From positions 124,001 to 188,000 of the IMG/VR virus record IMGVR_UViG_3300036766_000988: a stretch of DNA of 64,000 bases; one strand, given 5' to 3'. The first letter of the stretch is position 1. Every line of letters starts with the position of its first letter. Shown one piece after another: positions 1,885-43,429 of the stretch. Made by a program: the position numbers and the translations under genes. Under the pieces are notes generated by a model. It saw only the letters and a list, made by a program, of their open reading frames with translations. It ran no database searches and had not been told where the DNA came from.

Positions 1885-2176
1885 GGGCTTTCGTTCGATA
1901 GGAGCTGTTTCGCACCGCCTCCATCATCATCAGGAAGTTCCAGCGCGTCTGCATGTACCCGTTCCATCGAGAAAGAGCCGCCCCACACCCACCCAAACCA
2001 CTGACCACCATCCATCCGCACTTGGGGGTGTACTTCATCGCCCACTGATCTGCGCCGTTGATCAGATCAGGATTGAATCCGAGCGACTGCTTGCCCAACA
2101 CAGCGCACATGTGATTGAACACCCCGAGGAGTTCGGTCTTCGTCACCGTCGGGACTGTAACGCGTACGCGTTTCAT
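1865..2176 (-). CDS. hypothetical protein
   Basis: 103 aa ORF whose start overlaps the clpX stop. Confidence 0.55.
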   Translation of the reverse strand: MKRVRVTVPTVTKTELLGVFNHMCAVLGKQSLGFNPDLINGADQWAMKYTPKCGWMVVSGLGGCGAALSRWNGYMQTRWNFLMMMEAVRNSSYRTKAHDNARV

Positions 2177-3450
2177 CCCGATGCCTGTTTGACGGTCTTC
2201 GGCTCCTTCGTGACGATCACGGCCTTGCCCTTCTTCTCGACGACTTCCTCGGTGATCCGGATGGCCTTGATGTTGGGCTGGCTGCGGCTCTCGAACGAGT
2301 ATGGCTGCAAAATCGACTCGACGATGCTCCGGAGCGCACGAGCCCCAGTGGGGCGCTTCTTGGCTTCACGCCCGATTGCCTTGAGGGCAGCCTCGTCGAA
2401 CTGGAGGTCGATGCCATCGAGGCCGAAGAGCGCCTTGAACTGACGGATGATCGCGTTCTTGGGCTCGGTCAGGATCTGGACCATCTCGCCTTCGGTCAGG
2501 TCGATGGTGGTGGTCAGGACGGGCAAACGGCCCATCACTTCGGGAATGAGCCCGAACTCCAAGACGTCTTCCTCGGTAACCGAGAGGTAGGTCTCCGAAC
2601 CCGAGAGCTTCACGCGCTCGACCGACCCGAACCCAAGGCTCGTATGCCGGTTCACACGCTTGCTGATGACCTCTTCGATGCCCGCAAACGAGCCCGCGCA
2701 GATGAAGAGCACGTTGGTCGTGTCCATCACGTCTACGGCGCCCCCCATCCCGACCCGCATGCCGTTGCCGCGAGGGACAGGTACCTTCGAGCCTTCGAGA
2801 AGCTTCAAGATGGCTTGCTGCACCATCTCGCCGCCAACGTCACGGTAGCCCGTGGCTCCGCGTCCCGACTTGCGGGCGATCTTGTCGAACTCGTCGATCA
2901 GGACGATGCCCCACTGGGCACGCTCCATGTCTCCCCCGGCTTCCTGCATGAGGCCTTGGAGCAAGCTCTCGACGTCATCCCCAACATAGCCCGCCGCCGT
3001 CAGCTTCGTCGCATCACCGACGAAGAACGGGACGTTGAGCATCTTGGCCAGAGCCCGGGCGATGTGGGTCTTGCCCGTGCCGCTCGGCCCCATCAGCAGG
3101 ATGTTCGACTTCTCGATCTCGACATCTCCGAGATCGACGCCCTGTCGGAGAGCTTCACGCCGCCGGTAGTGGTTGTAGATCGCGATGCTGACGTCGGTCT
3201 TGGCCTTGTCCTGCGCGATGACCCGCTCGTCCAGGTAGCTCTTGATCTCGACCGGCTTCTTGAGCGGTGCCTCGTTCTCCTTGGCCGCCTGCTCCTTCTT
3301 CTGCTCTGCCGTGAAGGCCTTGAACCCCTGATCGATGCAGCGGTTGCAGATGAAAGGCCCCTCATCCGATGCGGAAATGAGGCCTTTTACTTCGTTCCGC
3401 GGACGCTTGCAGAACGAGCACTGGGCGATCGTGCTCTTGGGAGGGCTCAT
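2173..3450 (-). CDS. clpX: ATP-dependent Clp protease ATP-binding subunit ClpX
   Basis: N-terminal C4 Zn finger CSFC...ICNRC, Walker A GPSGTGKT, Walker B IVLIDEFDKI, RDVGGEMVQQAILKLLEG, LGF loop, GRLP, TGARALRSIVE. Confidence 0.95.
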   Translation of the reverse strand: MSPPKSTIAQCSFCKRPRNEVKGLISASDEGPFICNRCIDQGFKAFTAEQKKEQAAKENEAPLKKPVEIKSYLDERVIAQDKAKTDVSIAIYNHYRRREALRQGVDLGDVEIEKSNILLMGPSGTGKTHIARALAKMLNVPFFVGDATKLTAAGYVGDDVESLLQGLMQEAGGDMERAQWGIVLIDEFDKIARKSGRGATGYRDVGGEMVQQAILKLLEGSKVPVPRGNGMRVGMGGAVDVMDTTNVLFICAGSFAGIEEVISKRVNRHTSLGFGSVERVKLSGSETYLSVTEEDVLEFGLIPEVMGRLPVLTTTIDLTEGEMVQILTEPKNAIIRQFKALFGLDGIDLQFDEAALKAIGREAKKRPTGARALRSIVESILQPYSFESRSQPNIKAIRITEEVVEKKGKAVIVTKEPKTVKQASG

Positions 3451-5110: not shown

Positions 5111-6268
5111 CTAAACGATCTCCGTAGGAGGTTCGAACGGGAGGTCTGGCACCTGGAGGCCGACGATCTGCTGGGGATCAACGTAGAGCGTGTAGCTCAA
5201 GGTGGCCTCGACTTCCCACCGGCTAAATACCTCCCGAGCTTGAACCGAATACCCTTCGGGCCCGATTTCGATAGCCCCCACGTGCCCAAGAAGACCTGTG
5301 GGCTCAACGTTCTCGACAGGCAGCAGTCCATCCGTGAACGGGGAGAACGTCGAGTAGGCATGGGGCGGGAGAATCCAGAAGTCTGCGTATTCGAGGGTCT
5401 TCCAGTTGAGGTCCGCCATGTTGATGGGCTTGCGGGGTTCTGCTGCCGACGCTACCCGGCGGGCGATCTCGCGCACCCAAGAGGTTCCAATCCTGGCGGC
5501 AAGAGCCCGGAGGCCGTCATGCCGAAGACTGAACGTAAGAGGATCCCCAATTGACTGTTGACTTCGAGCGACCGCCACCGAGGGAGGGAGCTGCATGAAC
5601 CCCTTTGGGGGTGTATCCCGGACCTCGAAGTGGTCGAGGAACAGCTTGGCTGCCCCCTTGGTCGCATCGAGCAGTCCTGGGAGACTGGTTCGGAGGTCGT
5701 CGATCATGCTGGCGCGTCCCGAGCGGGTGATGACCCGCAATCGGGGATCGCCTCCATCTCGAAGAGCCAGTGTTTGGGGGTACCTGGCTTGAACCCGGGC
5801 GAGCCGCTCGACGTCCTTCGCTTGGTCGAAGTAGTGAGAGACCAGGAAGCCTTCGAGGTCTGGACGCAACCGGGGGAGCGGTTGGGCCATCGAGCCGTCT
5901 TCTCTGGGGACAGGCGCTGGGGTCCAGATGTCGTGATCGGTAAACCGCGCAACGGCCCGACCCGTGACCCGGTTGATGACCAACATCGCGTCCCCAAGCT
6001 GGAAGTACTCGTCCGCCAAGTACTGAGCGACCTGGATGGCTTCCTCGGGGGTGCATTCGAGCACCCGCTCTAGCTCAGGTGTGATGGCGCCAGCAAGCTG
6101 CTCTGGCGTGCTGTTTTGCTGCCTGGCTTGCTCGAAAGAAGCACGCAAGGCCTGGTTCCGTTGAACCTCCCCACGAGCAGCCAACAGAGGGCCGGAGGCC
6201 GGTTGCGCAAGCGTCCTGACCTCGGGGGTGAACCGAGCCAACTCTTGGGAGGGAGGATTGGGCATCAT
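5111..6268 (-). CDS. hypothetical protein; C-terminal half weakly resembles an HK97-fold capsid protein
   Basis: The 385 aa ORF is clear; the fold guess rests only on a long helix (ALAARIGTSWVREIARRVA) and the C-terminal LYVDPQQIVGLQV. Confidence 0.35.
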   Translation of the reverse strand: MMPNPPSQELARFTPEVRTLAQPASGPLLAARGEVQRNQALRASFEQARQQNSTPEQLAGAITPELERVLECTPEEAIQVAQYLADEYFQLGDAMLVINRVTGRAVARFTDHDIWTPAPVPREDGSMAQPLPRLRPDLEGFLVSHYFDQAKDVERLARVQARYPQTLALRDGGDPRLRVITRSGRASMIDDLRTSLPGLLDATKGAAKLFLDHFEVRDTPPKGFMQLPPSVAVARSQQSIGDPLTFSLRHDGLRALAARIGTSWVREIARRVASAAEPRKPINMADLNWKTLEYADFWILPPHAYSTFSPFTDGLLPVENVEPTGLLGHVGAIEIGPEGYSVQAREVFSRWEVEATLSYTLYVDPQQIVGLQVPDLPFEPPTEIV

Positions 6269-6495
6269 TTGAGAATATGGTCCCAGGCCGAGAGACGATC
6301 ATGGTTATCGAACTCTTGTTGGTTGGTGTCTGCCTCGGCCTTCACAGCAGGCTCAGCAACTCTACCCCCATCCCCACCAATATAGGCCGCTGTGGGTGTG
6401 TAAACTCGACGCCGAAGGATTGCTTCGATGGCCCGCAACATGGCCTCAGCCTCAGCTTCCCCAGCAAAATGGATTTCGACTCCCTGATCTGTCAT
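6265..6495 (-). CDS. hypothetical protein ending in SAWDHILK
   Basis: 76 aa ORF; stop overlaps the next start. Confidence 0.55.
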   Translation of the reverse strand: MTDQGVEIHFAGEAEAEAMLRAIEAILRRRVYTPTAAYIGGDGGRVAEPAVKAEADTNQQEFDNHDRLSAWDHILK

Positions 6496-6720
6496 CCGAG
6501 CGAAAGGGATGAAAGAAGAACCCTGCTCTAGGACTTCGAAATGTAGGACAACACCCCCACGATCCTCGACACCATTGGATGTGAAGAGTATCGCGCTTGC
6601 GGTGCCTACAGCTCCCGAAGCGTATTCAACATGTTCAACATCGATGAACGTTGTTGTAGCACGATTTTCCCATTGATCCTCACCCTTGCGAGGTGGTCGA
6701 AATAGTTGTCCCCCAGGTTA

Positions 6721-7659
6721 TTACATCCTGGTAGACGGTCGATGCTGATGATGTCCATGTGTACCTCCGTCCTGGCTTACACCATCCAAGACGAGTCCTA
6801 GTTGCCTTTCCATGAAGGCCTCTACCGGACACGCATGGTAGGGCACCACCAAGAGCCGTACGCCATGGGCAGCGCACTTGACGACCTTCTCGGCGTCTCG
6901 CTGCTGCTGAGCCTCGAAGTCGGCCGTGGATTTGCCGAACCACAAGGCAGGACGGTAATGCTGGGGGCCTTGGTACTCGAAGGCCAGCCTCAGCTCCTCG
7001 TTGTACCCATCAAGCTGTAGCCTGGTGCCACTGCTTCTGCGCAACCATTCCGGATTAGCCTTGGGGAACGGCTTGCCGAAACGTTGCTCCAACCACGCTC
7101 TGCACGAAGCTTCACCGACCAGGTCGCGACAATAAGGGCACCATCGTTTGTTGTTCCGTACGTTGTTGGGCACAGCCTCCCAGGTGTGGCCCTTGGCACA
7201 CTGCCACTGAAGCTTCGTCTCACCGTTGATGTAGGTCTCGGAGAGGCACTTTCCTCCATGGGAGGCAGCCATCTCTTGCATGAGCCCGATGGTGAGCCGG
7301 GCCTTCCCGCTACAGTGGGGGCACCAGTGCTTCTGAATCGTGTTGGGCACTGCTTCCCAGACGTGCCCCTCAGCACACTGCCATCGTAGCTTGGTAGCAG
7401 TGTTGACGTACGTGGTTGAGAGACACTTCCCGCCATGCGCAGCAGCCCGAGCTTGCATGTCCTCCAGGGTGAGAGGAGCGTTGCCGCTACAGAAAGGACA
7501 CCACTGCCGTGGGACCATACTCGGTCGAGCCTCCCAAGTGTGTCCTTCGGAGCACTGCCACGTCAGGTTGGAATGAGCCTCGACGAAGACGATAGAGAGA
7601 CACAGGCCGCCCCGGAGAGCGGCACGAGCGTGCATGTCTTGGAGCGTAAGACGACCCAT
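6721..7659 (-). CDS. zinc-ribbon repeat protein with C-terminal PD-(D/E)xK nuclease (putative freestanding homing endonuclease)
   Basis: Three ~57 aa repeats GGxCLS...WQCxxGHxWEA...WCPxC, then LQLDGYNEELRLAFEYQGPQHY. Confidence 0.8.
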   Translation of the reverse strand: MGRLTLQDMHARAALRGGLCLSIVFVEAHSNLTWQCSEGHTWEARPSMVPRQWCPFCSGNAPLTLEDMQARAAAHGGKCLSTTYVNTATKLRWQCAEGHVWEAVPNTIQKHWCPHCSGKARLTIGLMQEMAASHGGKCLSETYINGETKLQWQCAKGHTWEAVPNNVRNNKRWCPYCRDLVGEASCRAWLEQRFGKPFPKANPEWLRRSSGTRLQLDGYNEELRLAFEYQGPQHYRPALWFGKSTADFEAQQQRDAEKVVKCAAHGVRLLVVPYHACPVEAFMERQLGLVLDGVSQDGGTHGHHQHRPSTRM

Positions 7660-7690
7660 ACCCTACGTCATTCTACCCTATCCCCGAACG

Positions 7691-7725
7691 AAAAGAGGCC
7701 CGAATCTTTCGATCCAGGCCTCTTT
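7691..7725 (-). terminator. intrinsic terminator downstream of the AAA ATPase gene
   Basis: AAAGAGGCC/GGCCTCTTT inverted repeat; inner stem with GAAA loop and a following T-run on the minus strand. Confidence 0.7.
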
Positions 7726-7744
7726 GGGGCTACAGGAAAAACCT

Positions 7745-9328
7745 TCAGTCCTCGGTCTTGACGAGCTTCAAAGCGCCGCTCTTGTTGGGGTCCGCAGCGA
7801 ACCGAGCCCGAACTCCCTCGTTCAGATCCGGATCGTACCCAACCCAGTCGATCACTTCCTTGACCTCGTCGACCATGGTCTTGAGGATGCGGGGCTTCGA
7901 CTCCAGCTCATCCGCGAGGATCGCCTCATCGAGCGTGGCCTTACCCGCCGCGAAGCTTTCGATCATCGCAGCTTTGATGCTCTGCTCGATCTCACGTCCG
8001 ACCATGCCCTGAGCCTTCTCGGAGAGCATCGCAAGATTGAAGTCCTCGATCCTCTGACCGACCTTGACGATGTGGATCTTGAGGATGTCGATGCGGTCTT
8101 CCTCCGACGGGAGGTCGAAGAAGAAACGCTGATCCATGCGGTTGACGAACTCGACCGGCAGGGTCTTGAGGCTGTTCGCCGTCATGGCGAGGCACACGGG
8201 AGCCTTGGTCTCCTGAAGCCACGTGCTCAGGATCCCGATGGTGCGGCTCGTCGTACCGGCGTCCGAGGCCCCACTCGACTGGCCGCCCGAGAGGGACTTC
8301 TCCGCTTCGTCGATCCAGACGATGCAGGGAGCGACCGCTTCGATGATCTTGAGCGCACGGTAGACGTTCGCCTCCGAATCACCGACGCCCGAGCTGCGGA
8401 GCCGACCCATCTCCAGCCCGACCACCGGGAGCCCCCAGGCGTTGCCCAGGGCCTTCGTGGTGAGGCTCTTGCCGGTACCCCAGATGCCGACGCACAGGAT
8501 GCCCTTCGGAGGCACGAGCCCGAACTGACGACCCTTCTCGCTCCACGAAAGAGCCGACTTCCGCGCCCAGTCCTTGAACCGGCCGACGCCGCCGACCGTA
8601 TCGAACGAGCACTCGTCCGTGTTGATGTACTGCACGAGGTCCGTCTTGCGGAGCTGCCGACGACGGAACTCCGAGATGTAGTCGGGGTCGATCCGCTTCG
8701 GGTTCACCGCATCCTTGCGGGTCTTCACGATGCTCTGGGCGATCGACATGTCGATTTCGTAGCTCGTGAGCCCCTTGAAGTGCTTGGCGGAGTCCTTCGG
8801 AGGCGTCATCCCGAGGTAACCGCAGGCCTCTTCGACGGTCGAGAGGATCTCTTCCGAGGAAAGCCCGTTGTCGTGAACGACCTCGATGTAGCGCGAGAGC
8901 TTCTCGGGCACGACCTTGCGGGCGCCGACGAAGATCAGAAGCTTGATCGTCCGGATGTCGTTGTGGACTTGGTGGATGATGTTGAGGATGCGCCGCTGGA
9001 CGTGGGGATCGTTGAGGTAGCGCTCTGGGTCCGTGATGACGTAGAAGTTCTGGTCGTCCTTCGGGTCGTCCTTGTAGACCTGGATGAGCGCAGTGTGGAT
9101 GTCCGCCGCGTCACGGTTCTCCTGGTGGAGACGCGAACCCCAATCCTTGATGAGCTGGTTGAGCGGGACCAGACCGAGCGCCGCATTGAAGACCCACACG
9201 CGATCGGCGAGCTTCTTCAAGGTGTCGCGAAGCGTGATCAAGAAGCGGTCTTCCTCGTCGGTGACGAAGTAGATGCACCGCGACAGGCTTCGGAGGTGGA
9301 ACAGCAGCTCTTCGTTCGTCTTGGCCAT
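7745..9328 (-). CDS. Ycf46-family AAA+ ATPase
   Basis: Degenerate N-terminal AAA-like domain; active domain with GIWGTGKS, IVWIDEAEK, MTANSLKTLPVEF..RMD..FFFDLP. Confidence 0.88.
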   Translation of the reverse strand: MAKTNEELLFHLRSLSRCIYFVTDEEDRFLITLRDTLKKLADRVWVFNAALGLVPLNQLIKDWGSRLHQENRDAADIHTALIQVYKDDPKDDQNFYVITDPERYLNDPHVQRRILNIIHQVHNDIRTIKLLIFVGARKVVPEKLSRYIEVVHDNGLSSEEILSTVEEACGYLGMTPPKDSAKHFKGLTSYEIDMSIAQSIVKTRKDAVNPKRIDPDYISEFRRRQLRKTDLVQYINTDECSFDTVGGVGRFKDWARKSALSWSEKGRQFGLVPPKGILCVGIWGTGKSLTTKALGNAWGLPVVGLEMGRLRSSGVGDSEANVYRALKIIEAVAPCIVWIDEAEKSLSGGQSSGASDAGTTSRTIGILSTWLQETKAPVCLAMTANSLKTLPVEFVNRMDQRFFFDLPSEEDRIDILKIHIVKVGQRIEDFNLAMLSEKAQGMVGREIEQSIKAAMIESFAAGKATLDEAILADELESKPRILKTMVDEVKEVIDWVGYDPDLNEGVRARFAADPNKSGALKLVKTED

Positions 9329-9475
9329 GATCGTTTCTGTATCCTCGTGATCCTAGTACACCGCTTGAGGCTTGTTTTCAGCCAGCTTTTGCCGCTACAA
9401 ACACGAACGCCCGGCCCATGTGGACCGGGCGTCGAGTCCGGGGATCAAGGGCTGATCGTCAGCCCATCACGCACC

Positions 9476-9805
9476 TCAGCCCATCGCGCACATCAGCACG
9501 ATGTTGCCCTGCTGATCGACGACGCGGCTCTCGATGGAGATGCCCTGCTTCATGCACTCCTGGCGGTACTTGCTCTCGCCGTACGCCTGCTTGAGGACGC
9601 CGAGCGCCTCCGACGTGTGGCCGTAGTCGGAATCACCCGTGATGCGGCCCGACCGGAGGTCGAGCGTCGCGTTGTTGAGCTTGCCCGACGTGAAGCGGAG
9701 GCTGTCGTTCCCCTGCTCGACGTAGGAGATGCCCGCCGTCTTGCACGCCTGAATGGCGAGCGTCTTGTCCTTGATCTCGGTGTCGGTGGTTACTCGGTGG
9801 CTCAT
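9476..9805 (-). CDS. DUF1257 (Ycf35-like) protein
   Basis: MSHRVTTDTEIKDKTLAIQAC N-terminus, LKQAYG..., size and position next to the Ycf46-type ATPase. Confidence 0.7.
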   Translation of the reverse strand: MSHRVTTDTEIKDKTLAIQACKTAGISYVEQGNDSLRFTSGKLNNATLDLRSGRITGDSDYGHTSEALGVLKQAYGESKYRQECMKQGISIESRVVDQQGNIVLMCAMG

Positions 9806-9847
9806 GTCTCGTGCCTCTTCCTCTGTGGTGGCCCGGAGGCCGGTTGG

Positions 9848-10030
9848 TCAGCCTTCCCCGGAGATTTCGTGAACGGTGTCGCCCTCGGGCCCGATGTGCT
9901 CATCCGACTCCTGGCGCCCGACCGCGTTCGTCACCTTGTAGATCGACGAGCACAGATGCTCTCCTCGATCGAGAACCTCGGTGACGATCTTGCCGTTCTT
10001 GTCGATGACTGCTTTGAACTTCATGGCCAT
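9848..10030 (-). CDS. DUF2997 protein
   Basis: FKAVIDKNGKIVTEVLDRGEHLCSSI...LG-like pattern, ~60 aa, immediately upstream of DUF1257. Confidence 0.62.
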   Translation of the reverse strand: MAMKFKAVIDKNGKIVTEVLDRGEHLCSSIYKVTNAVGRQESDEHIGPEGDTVHEISGEG

Positions 10031-10108
10031 GGCGCTTGGGTCTCCTGTGGATGTTTGCGTCCTTGCCCCTAACCTATACACCGGTTCCGCGTCCAGACTT
10101 CAGAACGT

Positions 10109-10729
10109 CTAGCTGCTTTTGCGAAATTGCACCGTGGTACCAGGAGAGACAATCTGCTCGGTTGTGTCAGACGGCAAGGGGGTTGTCCAAGGATCTCGCT
10201 TAGGAATAGACGCAGACGGAGGAGATGGCAAGGTCTTCCCCGACTGATCGGGGGCATTGCCGAGCGCTAACCGGGCTGCGGTCGCAGTACTTCGAGTGGA
10301 AGCTGTGTTCTTTTGTGGGCTTGCCGTCCGATCCTCCGGCGACGTTGGTACGTCATTTTTCGTCGCAGGAGCCTGCATTGCAAGAGGGGCGGGCGGGGCA
10401 GGAATTGGGGATAGAGCTGCGGGCTCGACGAGATCCCGTGGATCGTTCCATGCCGAACGGATCTCGGGAGTCCGCCCCACATCGATCGTGATAAACTTCT
10501 GCGCGGTGATCTGCGGGAAACGAGGGTCGTCGGGCGTCATGCGGGAGGGGTTGTTGAAGAGCCTGTCCTCCCAGTTCGACACCCGTACCTCAAACCTCGA
10601 CTTGCCCCCAATGCTCCGGGTGCAGTCGAGGTTGAAGCACCGGGCACACCACTGCTCCTGGAACGTGTCGAGCGCTGTCCCACTCTCTGCGCACTCCGGC
10701 AGTAGATCTCGACGTGTCCCGGCCATCAC
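10109..10729 (-). CDS. hypothetical protein with N-terminal Cys cluster and low-complexity Pro/Ala/Thr tail
   Basis: ECA...WCARCFNLDC; 206 aa ORF. Confidence 0.55.
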   Translation of the reverse strand: MMAGTRRDLLPECAESGTALDTFQEQWCARCFNLDCTRSIGGKSRFEVRVSNWEDRLFNNPSRMTPDDPRFPQITAQKFITIDVGRTPEIRSAWNDPRDLVEPAALSPIPAPPAPLAMQAPATKNDVPTSPEDRTASPQKNTASTRSTATAARLALGNAPDQSGKTLPSPPSASIPKRDPWTTPLPSDTTEQIVSPGTTVQFRKSS

Positions 10730-11001
10730 CTAGGGAATTATATCAAAGTTTCAGGCTCGAAGGGCTACAAAGTGTACCCGAGGAAGCGCGGCTTCTTCGG
10801 CGCATCCTCGGGATCCCTCTTGGCAGCTCGTCGGATCGAGCGGTTCACCAACCGCTTCAAGTAACGACGCGACAGCGTATGATCGTGCCTACTGATCTGC
10901 TCGGCTCTCTTCACGGAAAAACACCTCCAGCGCCCGTTGGAGCGCTGGGTGTGGAATCCATGAGGGCATAAGCATCCCCGTACCCTAGCAGGGAGGCCGG
11001 G

Positions 11002-11874
11002 CTAGAGGAAGGCGCGGATGCAGATCCGCTTCTTGGCCGGAGTCAGGCTGGACTTGTTGATCGCCTCGGTGAGCGTGTAGCCGTCCGTGAGGAGCGTGAA
11101 GATCTCCTTCTGGGCCGACTCGTCGACACCCTTGGACGAGAGCTTGTCGAGAGCCCTCGACAAGGCGACCTGAGCCTCGATGCGCGTCTCGGCGACGTCA
11201 TCGCGGATCGTGTCCTCCCAGTAGTTGTTGTAGCCGCCCGCTGCCGTGTGGAACTGCGGGACGTTGTCCCCAAGAAGGTTCTTGCCGGGCATGGAATCCC
11301 CCGTGCGATCCTTCCACTTGCGCGAGCGGGTACGGCAGAAGTTCGCGAAATGATGGCGAACGCTGGTCCCGAGGTAGTTGAGAAACTGGTACGGCGTTGC
11401 CTTCGGAGCCGAGATCGTGATCTCCCCCTGATCCTTCCACTTCATCTCGTCGTTCCGCGTGGACAGCTCGACGATATCCTCACCACGGTAGGTGGCCTTC
11501 GGCGACGCATAGCCACCCGTGATCGGATCCGGCATCCACTTGCAGATGACCCGAGCGCCGTCCTTCTTCTTCCCCTGCTTGTGCCCCTTGCGGTAGCTCC
11601 ACTGACGAGATCGCCACTGCGTGAAGCGGATGCCGCCGAGGAACGCGCAGGCTTCGAGAGCCGTCATGGTCTCCGGAACAGAGCACGAGACGCGCTCGTG
11701 GAACTTCTCGATCACCTGCGCCTGGAGAAGCTTCTCCCACACATCCTGGCAAGCGTCTTCGAAGTTGGTGACGACCGTGTTCAGCTTGCGAATCTCGTTC
11801 GCAACGAACGGAGCGAAATCCCGGTACAGCTCGGTGTTGTCGCGGGGAATACCCGGACGCACGCGCATCGTCAT
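11002..11874 (-). CDS. ECF-like RNA polymerase sigma factor with internal insertion
   Basis: Region 2-like FAPFVANEIRKL..NFEDACQDVWEKL and FLNYLGTSVRHHFANFCR; region 4-like EIFTLLTDGYTLTEAI; start codon uncertain. Confidence 0.6.
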   Translation of the reverse strand: MTMRVRPGIPRDNTELYRDFAPFVANEIRKLNTVVTNFEDACQDVWEKLLQAQVIEKFHERVSCSVPETMTALEACAFLGGIRFTQWRSRQWSYRKGHKQGKKKDGARVICKWMPDPITGGYASPKATYRGEDIVELSTRNDEMKWKDQGEITISAPKATPYQFLNYLGTSVRHHFANFCRTRSRKWKDRTGDSMPGKNLLGDNVPQFHTAAGGYNNYWEDTIRDDVAETRIEAQVALSRALDKLSSKGVDESAQKEIFTLLTDGYTLTEAINKSSLTPAKKRICIRAFL

Positions 11875-12215
11875 GATGATCGTCCTCTCTCGTAGGTTGA
11901 GGCTACTACGCGGGCGACCCATGCCGTTCAGCCGCCCCCGTACCCAAAACGCCGTGCCCAGCTTTTTGGGAGCCCACTTCGTACCGCTTTCCTGATCTTC
12001 CTGTCAACCTCTACGGAGACGAAAGTAGTAAAAATTAAGGCAGTCCCGTATAGGAACTTTCCTGTGGGCTACGTACCGGTACTTCCTCTCTAGCTGGACT
12101 GTACGTTAGGGTTGAACCTGAGCGATTCCCGGTGTATGGGTGTCGATGTCTCTCGTGCCTCCTTCGGCGATCCCGCTGTCGAAGTGAGTCGTGCCAAGGC
12201 GGGGGCCGCTCCTTC

Positions 12216-16644: not shown

Positions 16645-17589
16645 ATGCGCAAAGTCCTCTTACAAGGAATCTACCAGATTCGGAACACTACCAACGGGCA
16701 CTCCTACATCGGAAGCTCAGTCAACATTCACAGCCGATGGTCCGGGCACAAGTGCGACTTACGACGGGGCACCCACGACAACCCCATCGTGCAGGCGGCT
16801 TGGTTGAAGTATGGGGAAGACGCCTTCGAATGGCTCGTGCTTGAGACCGTAGAAAACAGGCTGAAGCTGCTTGAGCGTGAAGCTCAACACATGCTCGTTC
16901 TGAAACCCGAGTACAACCTGTCAAACCCCAACGAAGAGACCCTTAACATCGGACATCCCATGTCTGATGAGGCAAAGGCTCGAATCAGCAAGGCCAATAA
17001 GGGACGGAAGCGCACTGAAAAGACCCGCGACTTGATGAGTCGGCTCGCGAAGGTTCGAGGCATGCCTCAAGAAGCACAGGCACGTCAACGAGAGGCGGTG
17101 ACAGGAAGGCATCGTTCTCCCGAAGTGCGGGCGAAGATTGCTGCATCGCATCTCGGGATACGTCCTTCGGAAGAAACGAAGGCGAAGATCAGTCAAGCGT
17201 TGACGGGACAACCTGGTCGAAAGCACTCAGAAGAAGCTAAAGCTAAAATCGGTGCTGGTCGGAGGGGGAAGAAGCACACCCCAGAATCTCGGGCAAAGAT
17301 GTCAGAAGCACACAAAGGACATGAAGTCACCCCCATACATCGGGCCAACATGTCTGCTGGACAGAGGGGTCGAAAACACTCTGAAGAAACGAAAGCCAAA
17401 ATCGGAACTGGGCGAAAGGGAAAACGACACACGGCCGGGGCCAAAGCCAAGATCGCGGCTGCTCGACGTGCCCGATCTACCAGCGGTGTCGCTGCTGTTG
17501 CGCTCGTTGAGCAAGCAGAGTGTCTCGCTGCCAGGAATCCATCCATCCATCCGACGTCTTGTACTGGCCGAACCGACGATGCAGCTTGA
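16645..17589 (+). CDS. GIY-YIG homing endonuclease with NUMOD3 repeats
   Basis: GIYQIRNTTNGHSYIGSS...RW..H...KYGEDAFEWLVLE; repeated KHSEExKAKI / KHTPESRAKMS. Confidence 0.92.
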   Translation: MRKVLLQGIYQIRNTTNGHSYIGSSVNIHSRWSGHKCDLRRGTHDNPIVQAAWLKYGEDAFEWLVLETVENRLKLLEREAQHMLVLKPEYNLSNPNEETLNIGHPMSDEAKARISKANKGRKRTEKTRDLMSRLAKVRGMPQEAQARQREAVTGRHRSPEVRAKIAASHLGIRPSEETKAKISQALTGQPGRKHSEEAKAKIGAGRRGKKHTPESRAKMSEAHKGHEVTPIHRANMSAGQRGRKHSEETKAKIGTGRKGKRHTAGAKAKIAAARRARSTSGVAAVALVEQAECLAARNPSIHPTSCTGRTDDAA

Positions 17590-41815: not shown

Positions 41816-42109
41816 TCATTTGGGCACTCCGTCGTCGGTCAACGACGCAGGGGCATGTCCGCAGTAGGGGCACGCTCCCACGGCCGGGAACCGTCCGGCG
41901 AGAAGGTCATCGAGCGACACGTTGACGAATCTCGACAGACGGAACGCGAGCAGCGGGGTGACCGTGCGGCCCTTCACGATGTTCGTGAGCGTCCTCGGCT
42001 GGAACCGCAGCGTCTCTGCGAGCGGGATCCAGCCGCCGAACCGCGTCCGAAGGAACCGCAAGGCGGCACGTACCCGCACTTGCTCTTCCCGCGTGAGATC
42101 AAGGTTCAT
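41816..42109 (-). CDS. XRE-like HTH protein with C-terminal CxxC
   Basis: ATG overlaps the transposase stop (TGATG); LAETLRFQPRTLTNIVKG...LSRFVNVSLDDLL; CPYC. Confidence 0.65.
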   Translation of the reverse strand: MNLDLTREEQVRVRAALRFLRTRFGGWIPLAETLRFQPRTLTNIVKGRTVTPLLAFRLSRFVNVSLDDLLAGRFPAVGACPYCGHAPASLTDDGVPK

Positions 42110-43356
42110 CACGAGCCTCCCGCCGCCATCAACGGCGGCTCGCCCCAGAACGACGCGTCGATCCCCAACTCGTAGATCGACTGCACCAGCACACGGATGT
42201 TGTGGCAGAGCACCTTCATGTAAATTTCGCTGACCTGCCCCTCGAAGGACTTCGCCCGTACCGAGGATCCGAGCACGCGCTTCACCGAACTGAACGTCGC
42301 CTCGGTCAAGCTGCGCTTGTGGTAGTGCTCCAAGAACGTCGGCCGGTTGTACGTGTAGAACGCGAACAAGCGGTTCCACAGGTCATCGTTGGCGCTCGCC
42401 TTCGAGTTCGACTTGAAGGGGACGAACGGCTCCGCGCCCGCCTTCACGATGGCCTTAAAGTTCTCCCGCGAAAGGTAGCCCATGTCGGCCGAGACCTCGC
42501 GCATCGCGAAGTTCTTCCCGGTCTGTTCGATGAGCCCAGGAAGGAACGGTGAGTCATGCGCGTTGCCTGGCGTGACCTCGGCGCCGGTGATGATCTGCGT
42601 CGTCACGCCGATCATCATGTGGAGCTTGAGCCACTTCTTCTCCCTACGATCCTTCCCCCACTTCTGATCGTGCCACCTGACGTAGCCCTTCGTGGCGATC
42701 CCGGTGCCATCGGCGGCGAAGTCCACCTCGACGGTGCGGAGCGGCTTTGCGCTTTCTTCGATCAGACGACGAAGCACCGGCACGGTCTCGGGCTCCCGCA
42801 TGATGCGGAAGACAGTGTTCGGATGCGGCACCACGTCGGTGAGGCCGCGCTCTTGACACGAACGGATGTCGCTCACGGCGCGGTCGCCGGAGAACAGCGT
42901 GAAGGTCTTGACCCCTGCGGCGAAGATCACGTCGGAAAGCGGGAGCGACGGGCGGCCGTTGCCCTTGTAGCAGGGCTGTTGGACGCCGTCGCAGAGCGCA
43001 CGGAGAAGCTTCTCGAAGATGTCCTTCTCGTTCATCCTCGCCTTGCGGTAGGCAGGCCAGTTCTGCGCGTACGTGATGCGCTTCTCTTCGGTCACGACGT
43101 TCCCGTCCGGCAACGTGATCTCACGGCGGACGATCAAGACCGCGTAGAGGTGCTTGCAGCGGTGCCCTGCCCCATGCTCTTCCGCGTCCGGGCACGAGCA
43201 GGTGCCCGCCACGGGATCCACGAAGTAGCTCCCCGAGTTCTTAGACTGCGAGGGAACGAGGTATTTGCCTTCGAGAACCTGCCGGATCTGCTTGCCCTTA
43301 CCTTGCACGATGGCGAGGCCGCGTTGCGCTCGGTAGTCGATGGCTGCGGTATCCAT
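42109..43356 (-). mobile_element. DDE transposase (IS4/IS5-like DDE_Tnp_1 type) with N-terminal SWIM zinc finger
   Basis: CSCPD..CKH; FAADGTG, KWLKLH, HDSPFL, VSADMGY, YHKRSLTEATFSSVKR. Confidence 0.88.
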
Positions 43357-43361
43357 GTGGA

Positions 43362-43429
43362 CTAATGTTGCCACAACGTAGCAACAGTCAAGACCCGCTT
43401 GACATGTTCCTACGTTGTGGCAACATTAG
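43362..43429. promoter_or_regulatory. 20 bp perfect inverted repeat around divergent promoters
   Basis: CTAATGTTGCCACAACGTAG (43362..43381) and its exact reverse complement (43410..43429); GTCAAG/CTTGAC between them. Confidence 0.85.

What the first reader, a model, noticed from the sequence alone, without database searches (positions are those of the whole stretch)
7745..10030. DUF2997-DUF1257-Ycf46 AAA+ three-gene module in a phage
Seen: three co-oriented genes with a GGTGTA motif upstream (about 10077), an internal hairpin (ACGCCCGG/CCGGGCGT near 9407..9432) and a terminator after the ATPase, so this looks like a self-contained operon. Established: Ycf35 (DUF1257) and Ycf46 occur together in cyanobacteria and algal plastids and their mechanism is unresolved. 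Here the ATPase has a degenerate N-terminal AAA domain, an unusual Walker A (GIWGTGKS) and a reduced Arg-finger region (NRMD). Inference: a substrate/adaptor + unfoldase system used by the phage to remodel a host or phage complex.
Basis: partly seen in the sequence, partly recalled or inferred. Interest (0 to 1): 0.62.

Follow-up and report, generated by a model that had tools for sequence, protein, structure and literature searches.

The report
Phage Ycf46-type ATPase with two partners
A giant phage carries a divergent copy of a three-gene set (a ring-forming protein-remodelling ATPase plus two small proteins predicted to bind each other) that is also widespread on plasmids, other phages and bacterial islands, and whose function nobody has tested.

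Summary
On the minus strand lie a 60-aa DUF2997-like gene (9848-10030), a 109-aa DUF1257-like gene (9476-9805) and a 527-aa AAA+ ATPase (7745-9328).

- **Small proteins.** Neither passes Pfam on its own. Profile-profile comparison with bona fide members does: DUF1257 98%, E 2e-13; DUF2997 91%, E 1e-6.
- **ATPase.** It has a P-loop-less, AAA-shaped N-domain that matches cyanobacterial Ycf46 (TM 0.80), followed by an active-looking classical AAA module. Clade-specific changes are W/Y in the P-loop and a 2-residue deletion that removes one SRH arginine.
- **Distribution.** All 19 related jumbo-phage contigs keep the three genes. The same triad, in other gene orders, occurs in IncC plasmids, Agrobacterium phage JP1, a Bacillus plasmid and bacterial islands.
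- **Unfoldase clue.** In some bacteria the ATPase is fused to an FtsH-type protease and is still followed by the two small genes.
- **Binding.** The two small proteins are predicted to bind (0.61 against 0.02 for the best control).
- **Transcription.** It is not one operon. A conserved terminator and a second GGTGTA promoter-like motif separate the small genes from the ATPase.

The function is inferred, not shown. Verdict: a real, divergent variant of an uncharacterised mobile-element module.

The parts
10077..10082 (-). GGTGTA promoter-like motif 1, 46 nt upstream of the DUF2997-like start codon; an AGGAG ribosome-binding site lies at 10046-10042
   Evidence: Sequence. A yGGTGTA motif sits at the same place in 14 of 15 related phage loci. 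The hexamer is enriched in intergenic DNA genome-wide. Promoter function is inferred.
9848..10030 (-). Divergent DUF2997 (PF11211)-like gene, 60 aa, with invariant Gly13, Cys27 and Gly38
   Evidence: ORF. Alignment A1 of 16 orthologues. Five of 16 orthologues hit PF11211, best E 6.6e-4. hhalign against 27 bona fide DUF2997: 91.1%, E 1e-6, controls at most 1.6%. Atlas feature search points to DUF2997 clusters.
9476..9805 (-). Divergent DUF1257 (PF06868, Ycf35)-like gene, 109 aa, with an invariant N-terminal Met-Ser (His3 in most orthologues)
   Evidence: ORF. PF06868 E 0.11 for the single sequence. Fourteen of 25 orthologues hit PF06868, best E 2.7e-4. hhalign against 24 bona fide DUF1257: 98.0%, E 2.1e-13 over 107 columns. 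Atlas structure TM 0.83 to a cluster that is 98% DUF1257.
9406..9433 (-). GC-rich hairpin followed by UUCGUGUUUGU: a predicted intrinsic terminator or attenuator between the DUF1257-like gene and the ATPase
   Evidence: Terminator scan. Fold dG -31 kcal/mol, z -4.6. A hairpin plus T-tract is present at this place in 14 of 15 related loci, although the sequence differs.
9357..9362 (-). GGTGTA promoter-like motif 2, 28 nt upstream of the ATPase start codon; a GAGGA ribosome-binding site lies at 9346-9342
   Evidence: Sequence. Present upstream of the ATPase gene in 15 of 15 related loci, always after the hairpin.
7745..9328 (-). Ycf46-type AAA+ ATPase, 527 aa. Residues 1 to about 235 form a P-loop-less, AAA-shaped (D1-like) domain. 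Residues 277-405 form a classical AAA module: Walker A GIWGTGKS, Walker B WIDEAE, sensor-1 TAN, and a shortened SRH (NRMDQRFFF). The C-terminal tail is disordered.
   Evidence: PF00004 4.4e-19 and phrog_8638 3.9e-83. PDB sequence hits to Cdc48/p97 D2. AF2 model pLDDT 78.7. Foldseek top hits are tandem D1-D2 chains of p97/Cdc48/Rix7. N-domain model pLDDT 81.8 matches AAA+ modules in the PDB and the cyanobacterial ycf46 cluster at TM 0.80. Motif alignment.
7692..7729 (-). Hairpin followed by UUUUCGUU: a predicted terminator after the ATPase gene
   Evidence: Fold dG -36 kcal/mol, z -4.8, no shuffle as good. Sequence.
10109..10729 (-). Conserved upstream neighbour in the phage clade only: a 206-aa protein with four invariant Cys (C-x14-C-x2-C-x4-C). 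It is not part of the wider triad.
   Evidence: Syntenic in 19 of 19 related phage loci. Alignment A6. No Pfam, PHROG or PADLOC hit. Not found beside the triad in plasmids or bacteria.
5111..6268 (-). Conserved downstream neighbour in the phage clade only (385 aa, unknown function). In this window an inserted HNH endonuclease gene separates it from the ATPase.
   Evidence: Syntenic in 18 of the 19 related loci; the 19th, L016, ends inside the ATPase gene. Alignment A5. Not related to the DUF3150 that follows the triad in bacteria (hhalign 0.2%).

Best explanation
**What it is.** The three genes are a jumbo-phage copy of a widespread mobile-element triad.

**Proposed mechanism.**
- The 527-aa protein is a Ycf46-type AAA+ ATPase built like a small Cdc48/p97. 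An N-terminal AAA-shaped domain has lost its nucleotide site. A C-terminal classical AAA module binds and hydrolyses ATP.
- It most likely forms a hexameric ring that unfolds or pulls apart a protein substrate.
- The DUF1257-like and DUF2997-like proteins bind each other. The C-terminal strand of DUF1257 pairs with the N-terminal strand of DUF2997.
- The pair acts as the ring's dedicated cofactor: an adaptor or regulator that selects the target, or itself a controlled substrate.
- Because plasmids, islands and phages all carry the triad beside replication and recombination genes, the likely target is a protein complex that matters when a mobile element establishes or replicates itself in a cell.

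**Predicted transcription in this phage.** The pair and the ATPase are read as two units, each from a phage-type GGTGTA promoter-like motif and separated by a terminator. Their amounts can therefore be set independently.

**Shown here.**
- Gene identities, fold and motifs.
- Conservation and synteny.
- The M41-protease fusion in relatives.

**Predicted.** Binding of the two small proteins.

**Inferred.**
- Hexamer formation and unfolding activity.
- Contact between the ATPase and the pair.
- The target.
- Promoter and terminator function.
For: **Identities.**
- Profile-profile matches to bona fide DUF1257 (98%, E 2.1e-13) and DUF2997 (91%, E 1e-6), with cross-controls at 1.6% or less.
- The ATPase hits Cdc48/p97 D2 by sequence and tandem D1-D2 chains by fold.
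- The N-domain is AAA-shaped and matches the cyanobacterial ycf46 cluster at TM 0.80, rmsd 2.8 A over 222 residues.
- Walker A Lys, Walker B DE and sensor-1 Asn are invariant across the clade.

**Co-conservation.**
- All 19 related jumbo-phage loci keep the three genes.
- In one bacterial phylum, DUF1257 and DUF2997 are adjacent at about 31 of 32 places.
- All 24 genomes with DUF1257 also have the ATPase, and the ATPase lies next to them.
- The triad is seen with different gene orders in a Pseudanabaena plasmid, a Bacillus plasmid and an IncC plasmid, in phage JP1, and in bacterial islands beside SSB, UvrD, PDDEXK and AAA_24 genes.

**Unfoldase reading.** In 11 sampled genomes the ATPase is fused to Peptidase_M41 (3.9e-21) and is still followed by DUF1257-like and DUF2997 genes.

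**Pair binding.** Complex prediction score 0.61 (runs 0.61, 0.59, 0.62), best of 3 controls 0.02. That mark was reached by 58 of 80 solved complexes and 2 of 110 mismatched pairs. The runs agree in at least 87% of contacts, and the partner's pLDDT is at least 65.

**Two transcription units.**

**Literature.**
- ycf35 and ycf46 are lost together in freshwater red-algal plastids (PMC5940233).
- A DUF2997-ycf35-fed7 cluster exists in cyanobacteria (PMC4284462).
Against:
- The ATPase family often occurs without the small proteins: 19 of 20 further bacterial loci and 57 of 80 viral loci. In cyanobacteria ycf46 sits in a separate operon (PMC13683863).
- In the phage the ATPase has its own promoter-like motif and a terminator upstream, so co-transcription is not required.
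- The phage clade has a small residue (G/N/A) where relatives have L/I/Y at pore loop 1, and it has lost the first SRH arginine. Both changes could weaken threading or hydrolysis.
- The clade sits on a very long branch.
- The complex score used my own shallow alignments, so its calibration holds only roughly.
Confidence: 0.5

Rival explanations
1. Synteny without partnership. In this phage the ATPase and the DUF1257/DUF2997 pair work separately and lie together only by descent. The ATPase is a stand-alone remodeller, like chromosomal Ycf46. The small pair has its own role, as in the cyanobacterial DUF2997-ycf35-fed7 cluster.
For: - The units look separate: a terminator plus the ATPase's own GGTGTA motif.
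- Many family ATPases lack the small genes nearby.
- Cyanobacteria keep ycf46 and the DUF2997-ycf35 pair at different loci (PMC13683863, PMC4284462).
Against: - Adjacency survives changes of gene order across phages, plasmids and bacteria.
- All 24 sampled genomes with DUF1257 have the ATPase.
- ycf35 and ycf46 are lost together in red-algal plastids (PMC5940233).
Confidence: 0.15
2. Conflict module. The triad is a defence, exclusion or counter-defence device of mobile elements. For example, the ATPase could dismantle a host immune complex, or the pair could sense an invader and trigger the ATPase.
For: - The distribution is patchy and tied to mobile elements: 24 of 301 genomes, and three copies in one MAG.
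- 600 of the 729 plasmids with an ATPase hit are conjugative.
- The ATPase resembles the IetA defence ATPase weakly (3.4e-10; NCBIfam).
- SGI1 uses an ATPase of the same superfamily as an antitoxin (PMC10954446).
Against: - The small proteins have no PADLOC match.
- The phage version has no recognisable effector; IetS-type or M41 proteases are absent.
- The neighbours are replication and recombination genes rather than defence genes.
- The IetA similarity is confined to the generic AAA core.
Confidence: 0.15
3. Crippled ATPase. In this phage clade the ATPase has become a slow switch or scaffold, or a decoy for a host homologue, rather than a processive unfoldase.
For: - Clade-specific loss of the first SRH arginine through a 2-residue deletion.
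- A small residue at the pore-loop-1 position.
- W/Y in place of the P-loop Pro.
- A very long stem branch.
Against: - Walker A Lys, Walker B Asp-Glu, sensor-1 Asn, Arg397 and the long loop after Walker B are invariant or nearly so across 15 sequences at 53-80% identity.
- The pore-loop-1 position is variable across the whole family, including the M41-fused members (T-V-G).
- A new, nearly invariant Arg401 could compensate; this is inference.
Confidence: 0.12
4. Redox or iron-sulphur role. The small proteins handle a metal or redox cofactor, and the ATPase assists assembly or repair.
For: - DUF2997 has one invariant Cys.
- The cyanobacterial pair is clustered with ferredoxin fed7 (PMC4284462).
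- A 4Fe-4S-binding gene lies next to the Treponema plasmid ATPase.
Against: - A single conserved Cys is not a cluster-binding motif.
- No ferredoxin or Fe-S gene lies beside the triad in the phage, IncC, Bacillus or bacterial-island contexts.
Confidence: 0.05

Closest known systems
Ycf46 (cyanobacterial and plastid AAA protein; Synpcc7942_0417, slr0374)
   Same: - Size of about 500 aa.
- The same two-part build. The N-terminal domain superposes on the cyanobacterial ycf46 cluster at TM 0.80.
- A classical AAA module at the C-terminus.
- Linked with Ycf35 by joint presence and loss in plastids (PMC5940233).
   Different: - Encoded in a phage, next to the DUF1257 and DUF2997 genes. In S. elongatus, ycf46 lies in its own three-gene operon with a CopG-like gene (PMC13683863).
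- The phage clade has W/Y in the P-loop and lacks the first SRH arginine.
- Orthology to true Ycf46 could not be tested with a tree, because no authentic sequence was reachable.
DUF2997 - Ycf35(DUF1257) - fed7 gene cluster of cyanobacteria
   Same: The same two small families, adjacent and in the same order, DUF2997 then DUF1257 (PMC4284462).
   Different: - There is no ferredoxin here; an AAA+ ATPase follows instead.
- The phage proteins are so divergent that Pfam misses them.
ATPase-DUF1257-DUF2997 triad of IncC plasmids, Bacillus and Pseudanabaena plasmids, Agrobacterium phage JP1 and bacterial islands (annotated only as DUFs)
   Same: The same three families, clustered together. The ATPases align over their full length, including the N-domain.
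   Different: - The gene order is usually ATPase, then DUF1257, then DUF2997. In the phage clade it is DUF2997, DUF1257, ATPase, with a terminator and promoter-like motif before the ATPase.
- Those copies have a canonical LRxGRFD SRH and a GxPGxGKS P-loop.
- DUF3150 often follows the triad in bacteria. The phage's downstream gene is unrelated to it.
Cdc48/p97 with its Ufd1-Npl4 heterodimeric cofactor
   Same: - Tandem AAA modules: the full model aligns with D1-D2 chains over about 550 columns.
- The best sequence hits are to the D2 module.
- A two-protein cofactor is proposed.
   Different: - There is no N-terminal double-psi-barrel cofactor domain.
- The D1-like module has no P-loop.
- The small proteins are unrelated to Ufd1 and Npl4.
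- This is a working analogy, not family membership.
FtsH-type AAA proteases (Peptidase_M41)
   Same: A subgroup of the same ATPase family, in the same triad context, carries a C-terminal M41 domain with HEAGH.
   Different: The window's protein has no M41 domain and no membrane anchor.
IetAS defence system and the SGI1 sgiAT toxin-antitoxin pair (AAA+ ATPase plus S8 protease)
   Same: Weak similarity of the AAA core to IetA. Both are carried on mobile elements.
   Different: There is no S8 protease partner, and the scores lie far below the family cut-offs (36.6 bits against 510 in NCBIfam).

Membership tests
DUF1257 / Ycf35 (PF06868) | Sequence homology to the family over its whole length | tested here: met
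   The single sequence is below Pfam's cut-off (13.1 bits against 22.2, E 0.11, C-terminal 39 aa only). Fourteen of 25 orthologues hit PF06868. The orthologue profile matches 24 bona fide members at 98.0%, E 2.1e-13, columns 1-109 against 1-126. Conclusion: a divergent member.
DUF1257 / Ycf35 (PF06868) | Shared fold | tested here: met
   The Atlas's own model of this protein (pTM 0.62) aligns at TM 0.83 over 109 residues with a cluster in which 98% of members carry PF06868. Both sides are predicted models.
DUF1257 / Ycf35 (PF06868) | Conserved N-terminal Met-Ser-His and the C-terminal Q-x-Y ... G block | tested here: met
   M1 and S2 are invariant, His3 is present in most orthologues, and Y75 and G88 are invariant in the phage clade. 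The same MSH start and Q-x-Y-A block occur in bacterial members.
DUF2997 (PF11211) | Sequence homology to the family | tested here: met
   The single sequence gives no hit. Five of 16 orthologues hit PF11211, best E 6.6e-4. Profile-profile result 91.1%, E 1e-6 over 50 of about 60 columns, with cross-controls of 0.2% and 1.6%. The support is moderate and rests on the profile.
DUF2997 (PF11211) | The D-G-x-V ... G-x-x-x-C core motif | tested here: met
   G13, C27 and G38 are invariant in the phage clade. In the hhalign alignment the Cys column aligns with the family's Cys.
DUF2997 (PF11211) | Lies next to a DUF1257 gene | tested here: met
   In the window it lies 42 nt upstream of the DUF1257-like gene. 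In bacteria the two families are adjacent at about 31 of 32 places.
Ycf46-type AAA+ ATPase | Family-specific N-terminal domain (AAA-shaped, no P-loop) | tested here: met
   The N-domain model (pLDDT 81.8) matches the cluster 'Uncharacterized AAA domain-containing protein ycf46' (Cyanobacteriota) at TM 0.80, 222 residues, rmsd 2.8 A. Generic AAA+ modules in the PDB reach only TM 0.45-0.58. The motif T-x-E-E-x-R stands where Walker A would be.
Ycf46-type AAA+ ATPase | One C-terminal classical AAA module with Walker A, Walker B and sensor-1 | tested here: met
   PF00004 4.4e-19 at residues 277-405. GIWGTGKS, WIDEAE and TAN are present and conserved.
Ycf46-type AAA+ ATPase | Canonical second region of homology with two arginines (L-R-x-G-R-F-D) | tested here: not met
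   The phage clade has V--NRMDxRFFF, a 2-residue deletion that removes the first Arg. All other family members aligned keep both. This is a clade-specific departure; it does not bear on descent.
Ycf46-type AAA+ ATPase | Orthology with plastid or cyanobacterial Ycf46 in a tree | not testable with these tools
The tree built here holds only phage, plasmid and one phylum's sequences.
Cdc48/p97-type (type II) AAA | N-terminal double-psi-barrel cofactor-binding domain and two nucleotide-binding rings | tested here: not met
   The protein begins directly with the D1-like module, which has no P-loop. The tandem layout aligns with p97 D1-D2. It works like this family but is not a member.
FtsH-type AAA protease | C-terminal Peptidase_M41 domain with HExxH | tested here: not met
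   There is no M41 hit in the window protein. The domain is present in a bacterial subgroup of the same ATPase family.
IetAS-type defence system | IetA-level similarity and an adjacent S8 protease (IetS) | tested here: not met
   IetA scores 36.6 bits against a cut-off of 510, and 3.4e-10 in PADLOC. No protease gene lies in 5111-11922.

The most novel reading that the evidence does not exclude
The ATPase-DUF1257-DUF2997 triad may be a general, still undescribed 'establishment' machine of mobile DNA. In this reading it is a minimal Cdc48-like segregase with its own two-protein cofactor. Phages, conjugative plasmids and islands would use it to strip or unfold a host or element protein at replication or recombination intermediates. 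The plastid and cyanobacterial Ycf46 and Ycf35 would be its domesticated relatives. The jumbo-phage form, with one arginine finger and separately controlled cofactor genes, would be a re-engineered variant. Working it out in a tractable phage or plasmid would then give the first handle on the long-open function of ycf35 and ycf46.
Probability: 0.25. Interest if true: 0.75.

Novelty: new variant of a known kind. Interest (0 to 1): 0.55.

Why it matters
Ycf46 and Ycf35 have been carried as 'hypothetical chloroplast frames' for decades. DUF1257 and DUF2997 are named in only five papers of the searchable library, and none of them describes the link with the ATPase.

- **Scale.** The three families form a tight gene set that travels on jumbo phages, a cultured Agrobacterium phage, Bacillus and cyanobacterial plasmids, and bacterial islands. 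Hundreds of plasmids carry the ATPase, and the IncC example examined has all three genes.
- **Mechanism clue.** In some bacteria the ATPase is fused to an FtsH-type protease.
- **Testable idea.** An unfoldase with a two-protein cofactor can be tested in laboratory systems.
- **By-product.** The GGTGTA motif looks like the promoter signal of a whole group of very large uncultured phages, which would help annotate their transcription units.

Tried and rejected
- **Cultured-phage searches.** blastn of the region and tblastn of the DUF1257-like protein against cultured phage genomes found nothing. The clade has no cultured close relative.
- **Direct family scans.** Pfam, PHROG, NCBIfam and PADLOC scans of the two small proteins gave no significant hit. 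Profiles were needed.
- **Extended motif.** CGGTGTANNAGG is not clearly enriched: 8 matches against 2.75 expected, and 1 of 100 shuffles did as well. Only the core hexamer and its position are informative.
- **Phage-clade neighbours.** I tested whether p385 or the Cys4 protein corresponds to the DUF3150 that follows the triad in bacteria, or to the genes after the triad in the IncC, Arthrobacter and Pseudanabaena plasmids. It does not (hhalign at most 0.3%).
- **'MPCDT...' proteins.** These small proteins sit beside related ATPases in 32 viral contigs. I tested whether they are hidden DUF1257 or DUF2997 members. They are not (at most 1.9%).
- **Iterated HMM searches.** They did not raise the number of viral loci with the small genes much: 23 of 80.
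- **Genome-collection scan.** With the ATPase alignment it returned only 4 loci, because the patterns were narrow. The family survey was done with the genome search instead.
- **Third word search.** It gave only unnamed or generically named 'AAA family ATPase' hits and did not settle the Ycf46 label.
- **Tree.** A maximum-likelihood run did not finish in time. The tree reported is FastTree only and has long-branch warnings.
- **Complex prediction.** ATPase-partner binding was not tried.


Full report
**1. Where the window lies**

The window is bases 124001-188000 of a 252-kb IMG/VR virus record that CheckV rates 53% complete. Its large ORFs match phage DNA polymerase, DnaB-type and other helicases, an exonuclease and several homing endonucleases. 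Related contigs reach 435-529 kb. This is therefore the replication region of a very large uncultured phage with about 60% G+C.

**2. The observation**

Three co-oriented minus-strand ORFs sit exactly at the stated coordinates: 9848-10030 (60 aa), 9476-9805 (109 aa) and 7745-9328 (527 aa).

- **ATPase.** It hits Pfam AAA at residues 277-405 (4.4e-19) and the functionless phrog_8638 over its whole length (3.9e-83).
- **Small proteins, direct scans.** They fail. The 109-aa protein gives PF06868 E 0.11 over its last 39 residues. The 60-aa protein gives nothing.
- **Orthologue scans.** I collected orthologues (58 proteins for the 109-aa gene; 15 loci for both) and aligned them (A1, A2). Fourteen of 25 DUF1257-like orthologues hit PF06868. 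Five of 16 DUF2997-like orthologues hit PF11211.
- **Profile-profile test.** I gathered bona fide members independently with the Pfam models in 301 genomes of one bacterial phylum. The phage 109-aa family matches DUF1257 at 98.0%, E 2.1e-13 over its full length. The 60-aa family matches DUF2997 at 91.1%, E 1e-6. The two cross-comparisons give 0.2% and 1.6%.
- **Atlas searches.** They agree: structure TM 0.83 to a DUF1257 cluster, and a feature search that points to DUF2997 clusters.

Both small genes are divergent members of the named families.

**3. The ATPase**

- **Sequence.** The best solved relatives are the D2 modules of Cdc48/p97 (E about 1e-35).
- **Whole-protein fold.** An AlphaFold2 model (pLDDT 78.7) aligns over about 550 columns with tandem D1-D2 chains of p97, Cdc48 and Rix7.
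- **N-domain fold.** Residues 1-240 folded alone (pLDDT 81.8) find only AAA+ modules in the PDB: spastin, Hda, Rpt subunits, Vps4 and RFC, at TM 0.45-0.58.
- **Lost nucleotide site.** The strand-loop where Walker A should be reads VTDEEDRF.
- **Ycf46 link.** In the ESM Atlas the same N-domain matches the cluster named 'Uncharacterized AAA domain-containing protein ycf46' (Cyanobacteriota) at TM 0.80, rmsd 2.8 A over 222 residues. This is the best evidence available here for the Ycf46 label. A tree with authentic Ycf46 could not be made.
- **Motifs kept**: Walker A fits GxxGxGKS, and Walker B (WIDEAE) and sensor-1 (TAN) are intact.
- **Clade-specific changes**:
  - This clade has W or Y where every other family member aligned has Pro.
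  - The SRH has a 2-residue deletion (LRxGRFD becomes V--NRMD) that removes the first arginine. A nearly invariant Arg401 appears four residues later.
- **Pore loop 1.** The position before V-G is small here (G/N/A), but it varies across the whole family (L, I, Y, K, T), so I give it little weight.
- **Family hallmark.** A long loop after Walker B (SSGxSDxGTTxR) is conserved across the family.

**4. Is it one operon?**

No.

- The hairpin at 9406-9433 (dG -31 kcal/mol, z -4.6) is followed by a U-rich tract. A second hairpin at 7692-7729 (dG -36, z -4.8) plus a U-tract follows the ATPase gene.
- In 14 of 15 related loci, a strong hairpin with a T-tract lies between the DUF1257-like gene and the ATPase, although its sequence differs.
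- In all 15 loci, that position is followed by a yGGTGTA motif 20-50 nt before the ATPase start codon. The same motif precedes the DUF2997-like gene in 14 of 15.
- In the window the two motifs lie at 10082-10077 and 9362-9357, each followed by a Shine-Dalgarno sequence.
- Genome-wide, 57 of 170 GGTGTA copies are intergenic, against a median of 17 for permuted hexamers. Thirty-seven lie 0-20 nt before a crude gene start (examples).

I read GGTGTA as the promoter element of this phage group. The module then has two units, [DUF2997+DUF1257] and [ATPase]. This reading is inferred, because no transcript data could be obtained.

**5. Co-conservation**

Within the phage clade:

- All 19 loci (ATPase identity 52-67%) keep the block: Cys4 protein, DUF2997-like, DUF1257-like and ATPase. 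The 385-aa protein follows in 18; the 19th locus ends inside the ATPase gene.
- That alone could be plain synteny, so I looked further out.

In a delta-proteobacterial MAG:

- An ATPase 32% identical over residues 109-519 is followed by a DUF1257 gene and a DUF2997 gene that both pass Pfam (8e-8 and 2e-12).
- The MAG holds three copies of this island.

In 301 genomes of that phylum:

- DUF1257 occurs in 24 and DUF2997 in 30. The two are adjacent at about 31 of 32 places.
- The phage ATPase profile hits a neighbouring gene nearly full-length at almost every one (E about 1e-100).
- All 24 genomes with DUF1257 have the ATPase.

In annotated records, the same triad appears in:

- a Pseudanabaena plasmid,
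- a 204-kb Bacillus plasmid,
- an IncC plasmid; 729 plasmids in the collection have an ATPase hit, 600 of them conjugative,
- an Arthrobacter plasmid, where only the ATPase and DUF2997 were detected,
- Agrobacterium phage JP1.

Bacterial islands place it beside SSB, DUF3150, AAA_24, PDDEXK and UvrD genes.

The gene order differs between these contexts. The only shared genes are the three, and the phage-clade neighbours are not part of the triad.

Conversely, the ATPase family also occurs alone:

- 19 of 20 further bacterial loci lack the small genes.
- Fifty-seven of 80 viral loci of another ATPase clade lack them too. Thirty-two of those 80 loci carry an unrelated small 'MPCDT...' protein instead.

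The dependence therefore runs one way. Outside cyanobacteria, the small pair comes with the ATPase.

**6. Clues to mechanism**

- **Protease fusion.** In 11 sampled genomes the family ATPase is about 715 aa long and carries a C-terminal Peptidase_M41 domain with HEAGH (3.9e-21). It is still followed by DUF1257-like and DUF2997 genes. A fusion to the FtsH protease domain argues that this ATPase family threads polypeptides.
- **Predicted pair binding.**
  - The score is 0.61 (runs 0.61, 0.59, 0.62), and the best of 3 controls is 0.02.
  - That mark was reached by 58 of 80 solved complexes and 2 of 110 mismatched pairs.
  - The runs agree in at least 87% of contacts, and the partner's pLDDT is at least 65.
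  - The contact is a strand pairing of DUF1257 residues 101-107 with DUF2997 residues 3-9.
  - The tool's caveat applies: this supports binding but does not show it, and my own alignments were used.
- **Literature.**
  - ycf35 and ycf46 are lost together in freshwater red algae (PMC5940233).
  - DUF2997-ycf35-fed7 is a cyanobacterial cluster (PMC4284462).
  - Ycf46 is a stress-induced, KaiC-interacting ATPase in its own operon (PMC13683863).
  - No paper in the library links the three families as a module.

**7. Verdict**

The most likely reading is a Cdc48-like ring unfoldase (dead D1, live D2) with a DUF1257-DUF2997 heterodimer as its cofactor or controlled substrate. Mobile elements would use it during establishment or replication.

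- **Confidence.** About 0.5 for this mechanism, and about 0.9 for the gene identities.
- **Rivals.** Mere synteny, a conflict system, a crippled ATPase in this clade, and a redox role.
- **Tree.** In a FastTree, the phage clade is monophyletic on a very long stem. It groups weakly with phage JP1; long-branch warnings apply.
- **Classification.** This is a new, divergent variant of a module that is visible in databases but functionally unknown.

Noticed in passing
whole genome G000; window examples 3465(-), 25321(-), 28833(-), 31970(-), 32847(-), 35627(-), 44994(+), 45349(+), 56100(+), 58460(-), 60106(-): GGTGTA behaves as a genome-wide promoter-like element. There are 170 copies, 57 of them intergenic, against a median of 17 for permuted hexamers. 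At many genes it lies only about 12 nt before the ATG or GTG, which would give leaderless or very short-leader mRNAs. The same motif is conserved in 15 related jumbo-phage contigs.
   Followed up: partly
window 6721-7659 (-) and 6265-6495 (-); L012:3436-3972: An HNH/treble-clef endonuclease gene (phrog_559 2.9e-36, DUF4379) and a 76-aa ORF are inserted between the ATPase and the 385-aa gene, relative to most relatives. In relative L012, a different 178-aa Cys-rich ORF sits between the DUF1257-like gene and the ATPase; it was not scanned against any family library. The module is a target for inserted genes.
   Followed up: partly
window 10109-10729 (-): The conserved upstream gene encodes a protein with four invariant Cys (C-x14-C-x2-C-x4-C), a Pro-rich linker and a conserved C-terminus (...PGATVKLGGSGV). 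In relatives its last codons (GGT GTA TAG) overlap the GGTGTA motif. The window copy ends earlier (…FRKSS), and the motif lies outside its frame.
   Followed up: partly
window 11002-11922 (-): A 306-aa protein gives a weak Sigma-70 region 2 hit (E 0.0017, below the cut-off). It could be a phage sigma-like factor that reads the GGTGTA motif. Not tested.
   Followed up: no
L179-L189 (for example L179:694-2826, minus strand): A bacterial subgroup of the same ATPase family is fused to an FtsH-type Peptidase_M41 domain, has no recognised membrane-anchor domain in the Pfam scan, and is followed by DUF1257-like and DUF2997 genes. This would be a soluble AAA protease with two small partners.
   Followed up: yes
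L116, L119, L126, L130 and 28 further viral loci of L099-L178: A conserved protein of about 115 aa that starts MPCDT(R/K)LK lies beside related ATPases in 32 of 80 viral contigs. In the loci read, a ~250-350-aa gene with '...TLRPGLLVSL...' lies between it and the ATPase. It is not related to DUF1257 or DUF2997 by hhalign. It may be an alternative partner set.
   Followed up: partly
P0162 (708 aa), L108:4920-8051, Atlas cluster of 1001 aa: Some homologues of the ATPase carry an intein (PF14890, LAGLIDADG) inside the AAA module.
   Followed up: no
L023, L024, L029, L030 (G001 contigs C2, C20, C21); L025 (G002): One delta-proteobacterial MAG holds three near-identical copies of an island: UvrD helicase, a 165-aa gene, the ATPase, DUF1257, DUF2997 and DUF3150. 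In a second MAG the ATPase is split by a frameshift into 254-aa and 231-aa ORFs.
   Followed up: partly
window 2173-3450 (-): A second, unrelated AAA-type ATPase (425 aa, phrog_4339 1.1e-84) lies 4 kb downstream of the module.
   Followed up: no
window 42109-43374 (-) and 16645-17589 (+): A transposase-like gene (phrog_2262, 7e-24) and a GIY-YIG-type homing endonuclease (phrog_314, 1e-44) lie within the phage replication region. No tRNA gene is present in the window.
   Followed up: no
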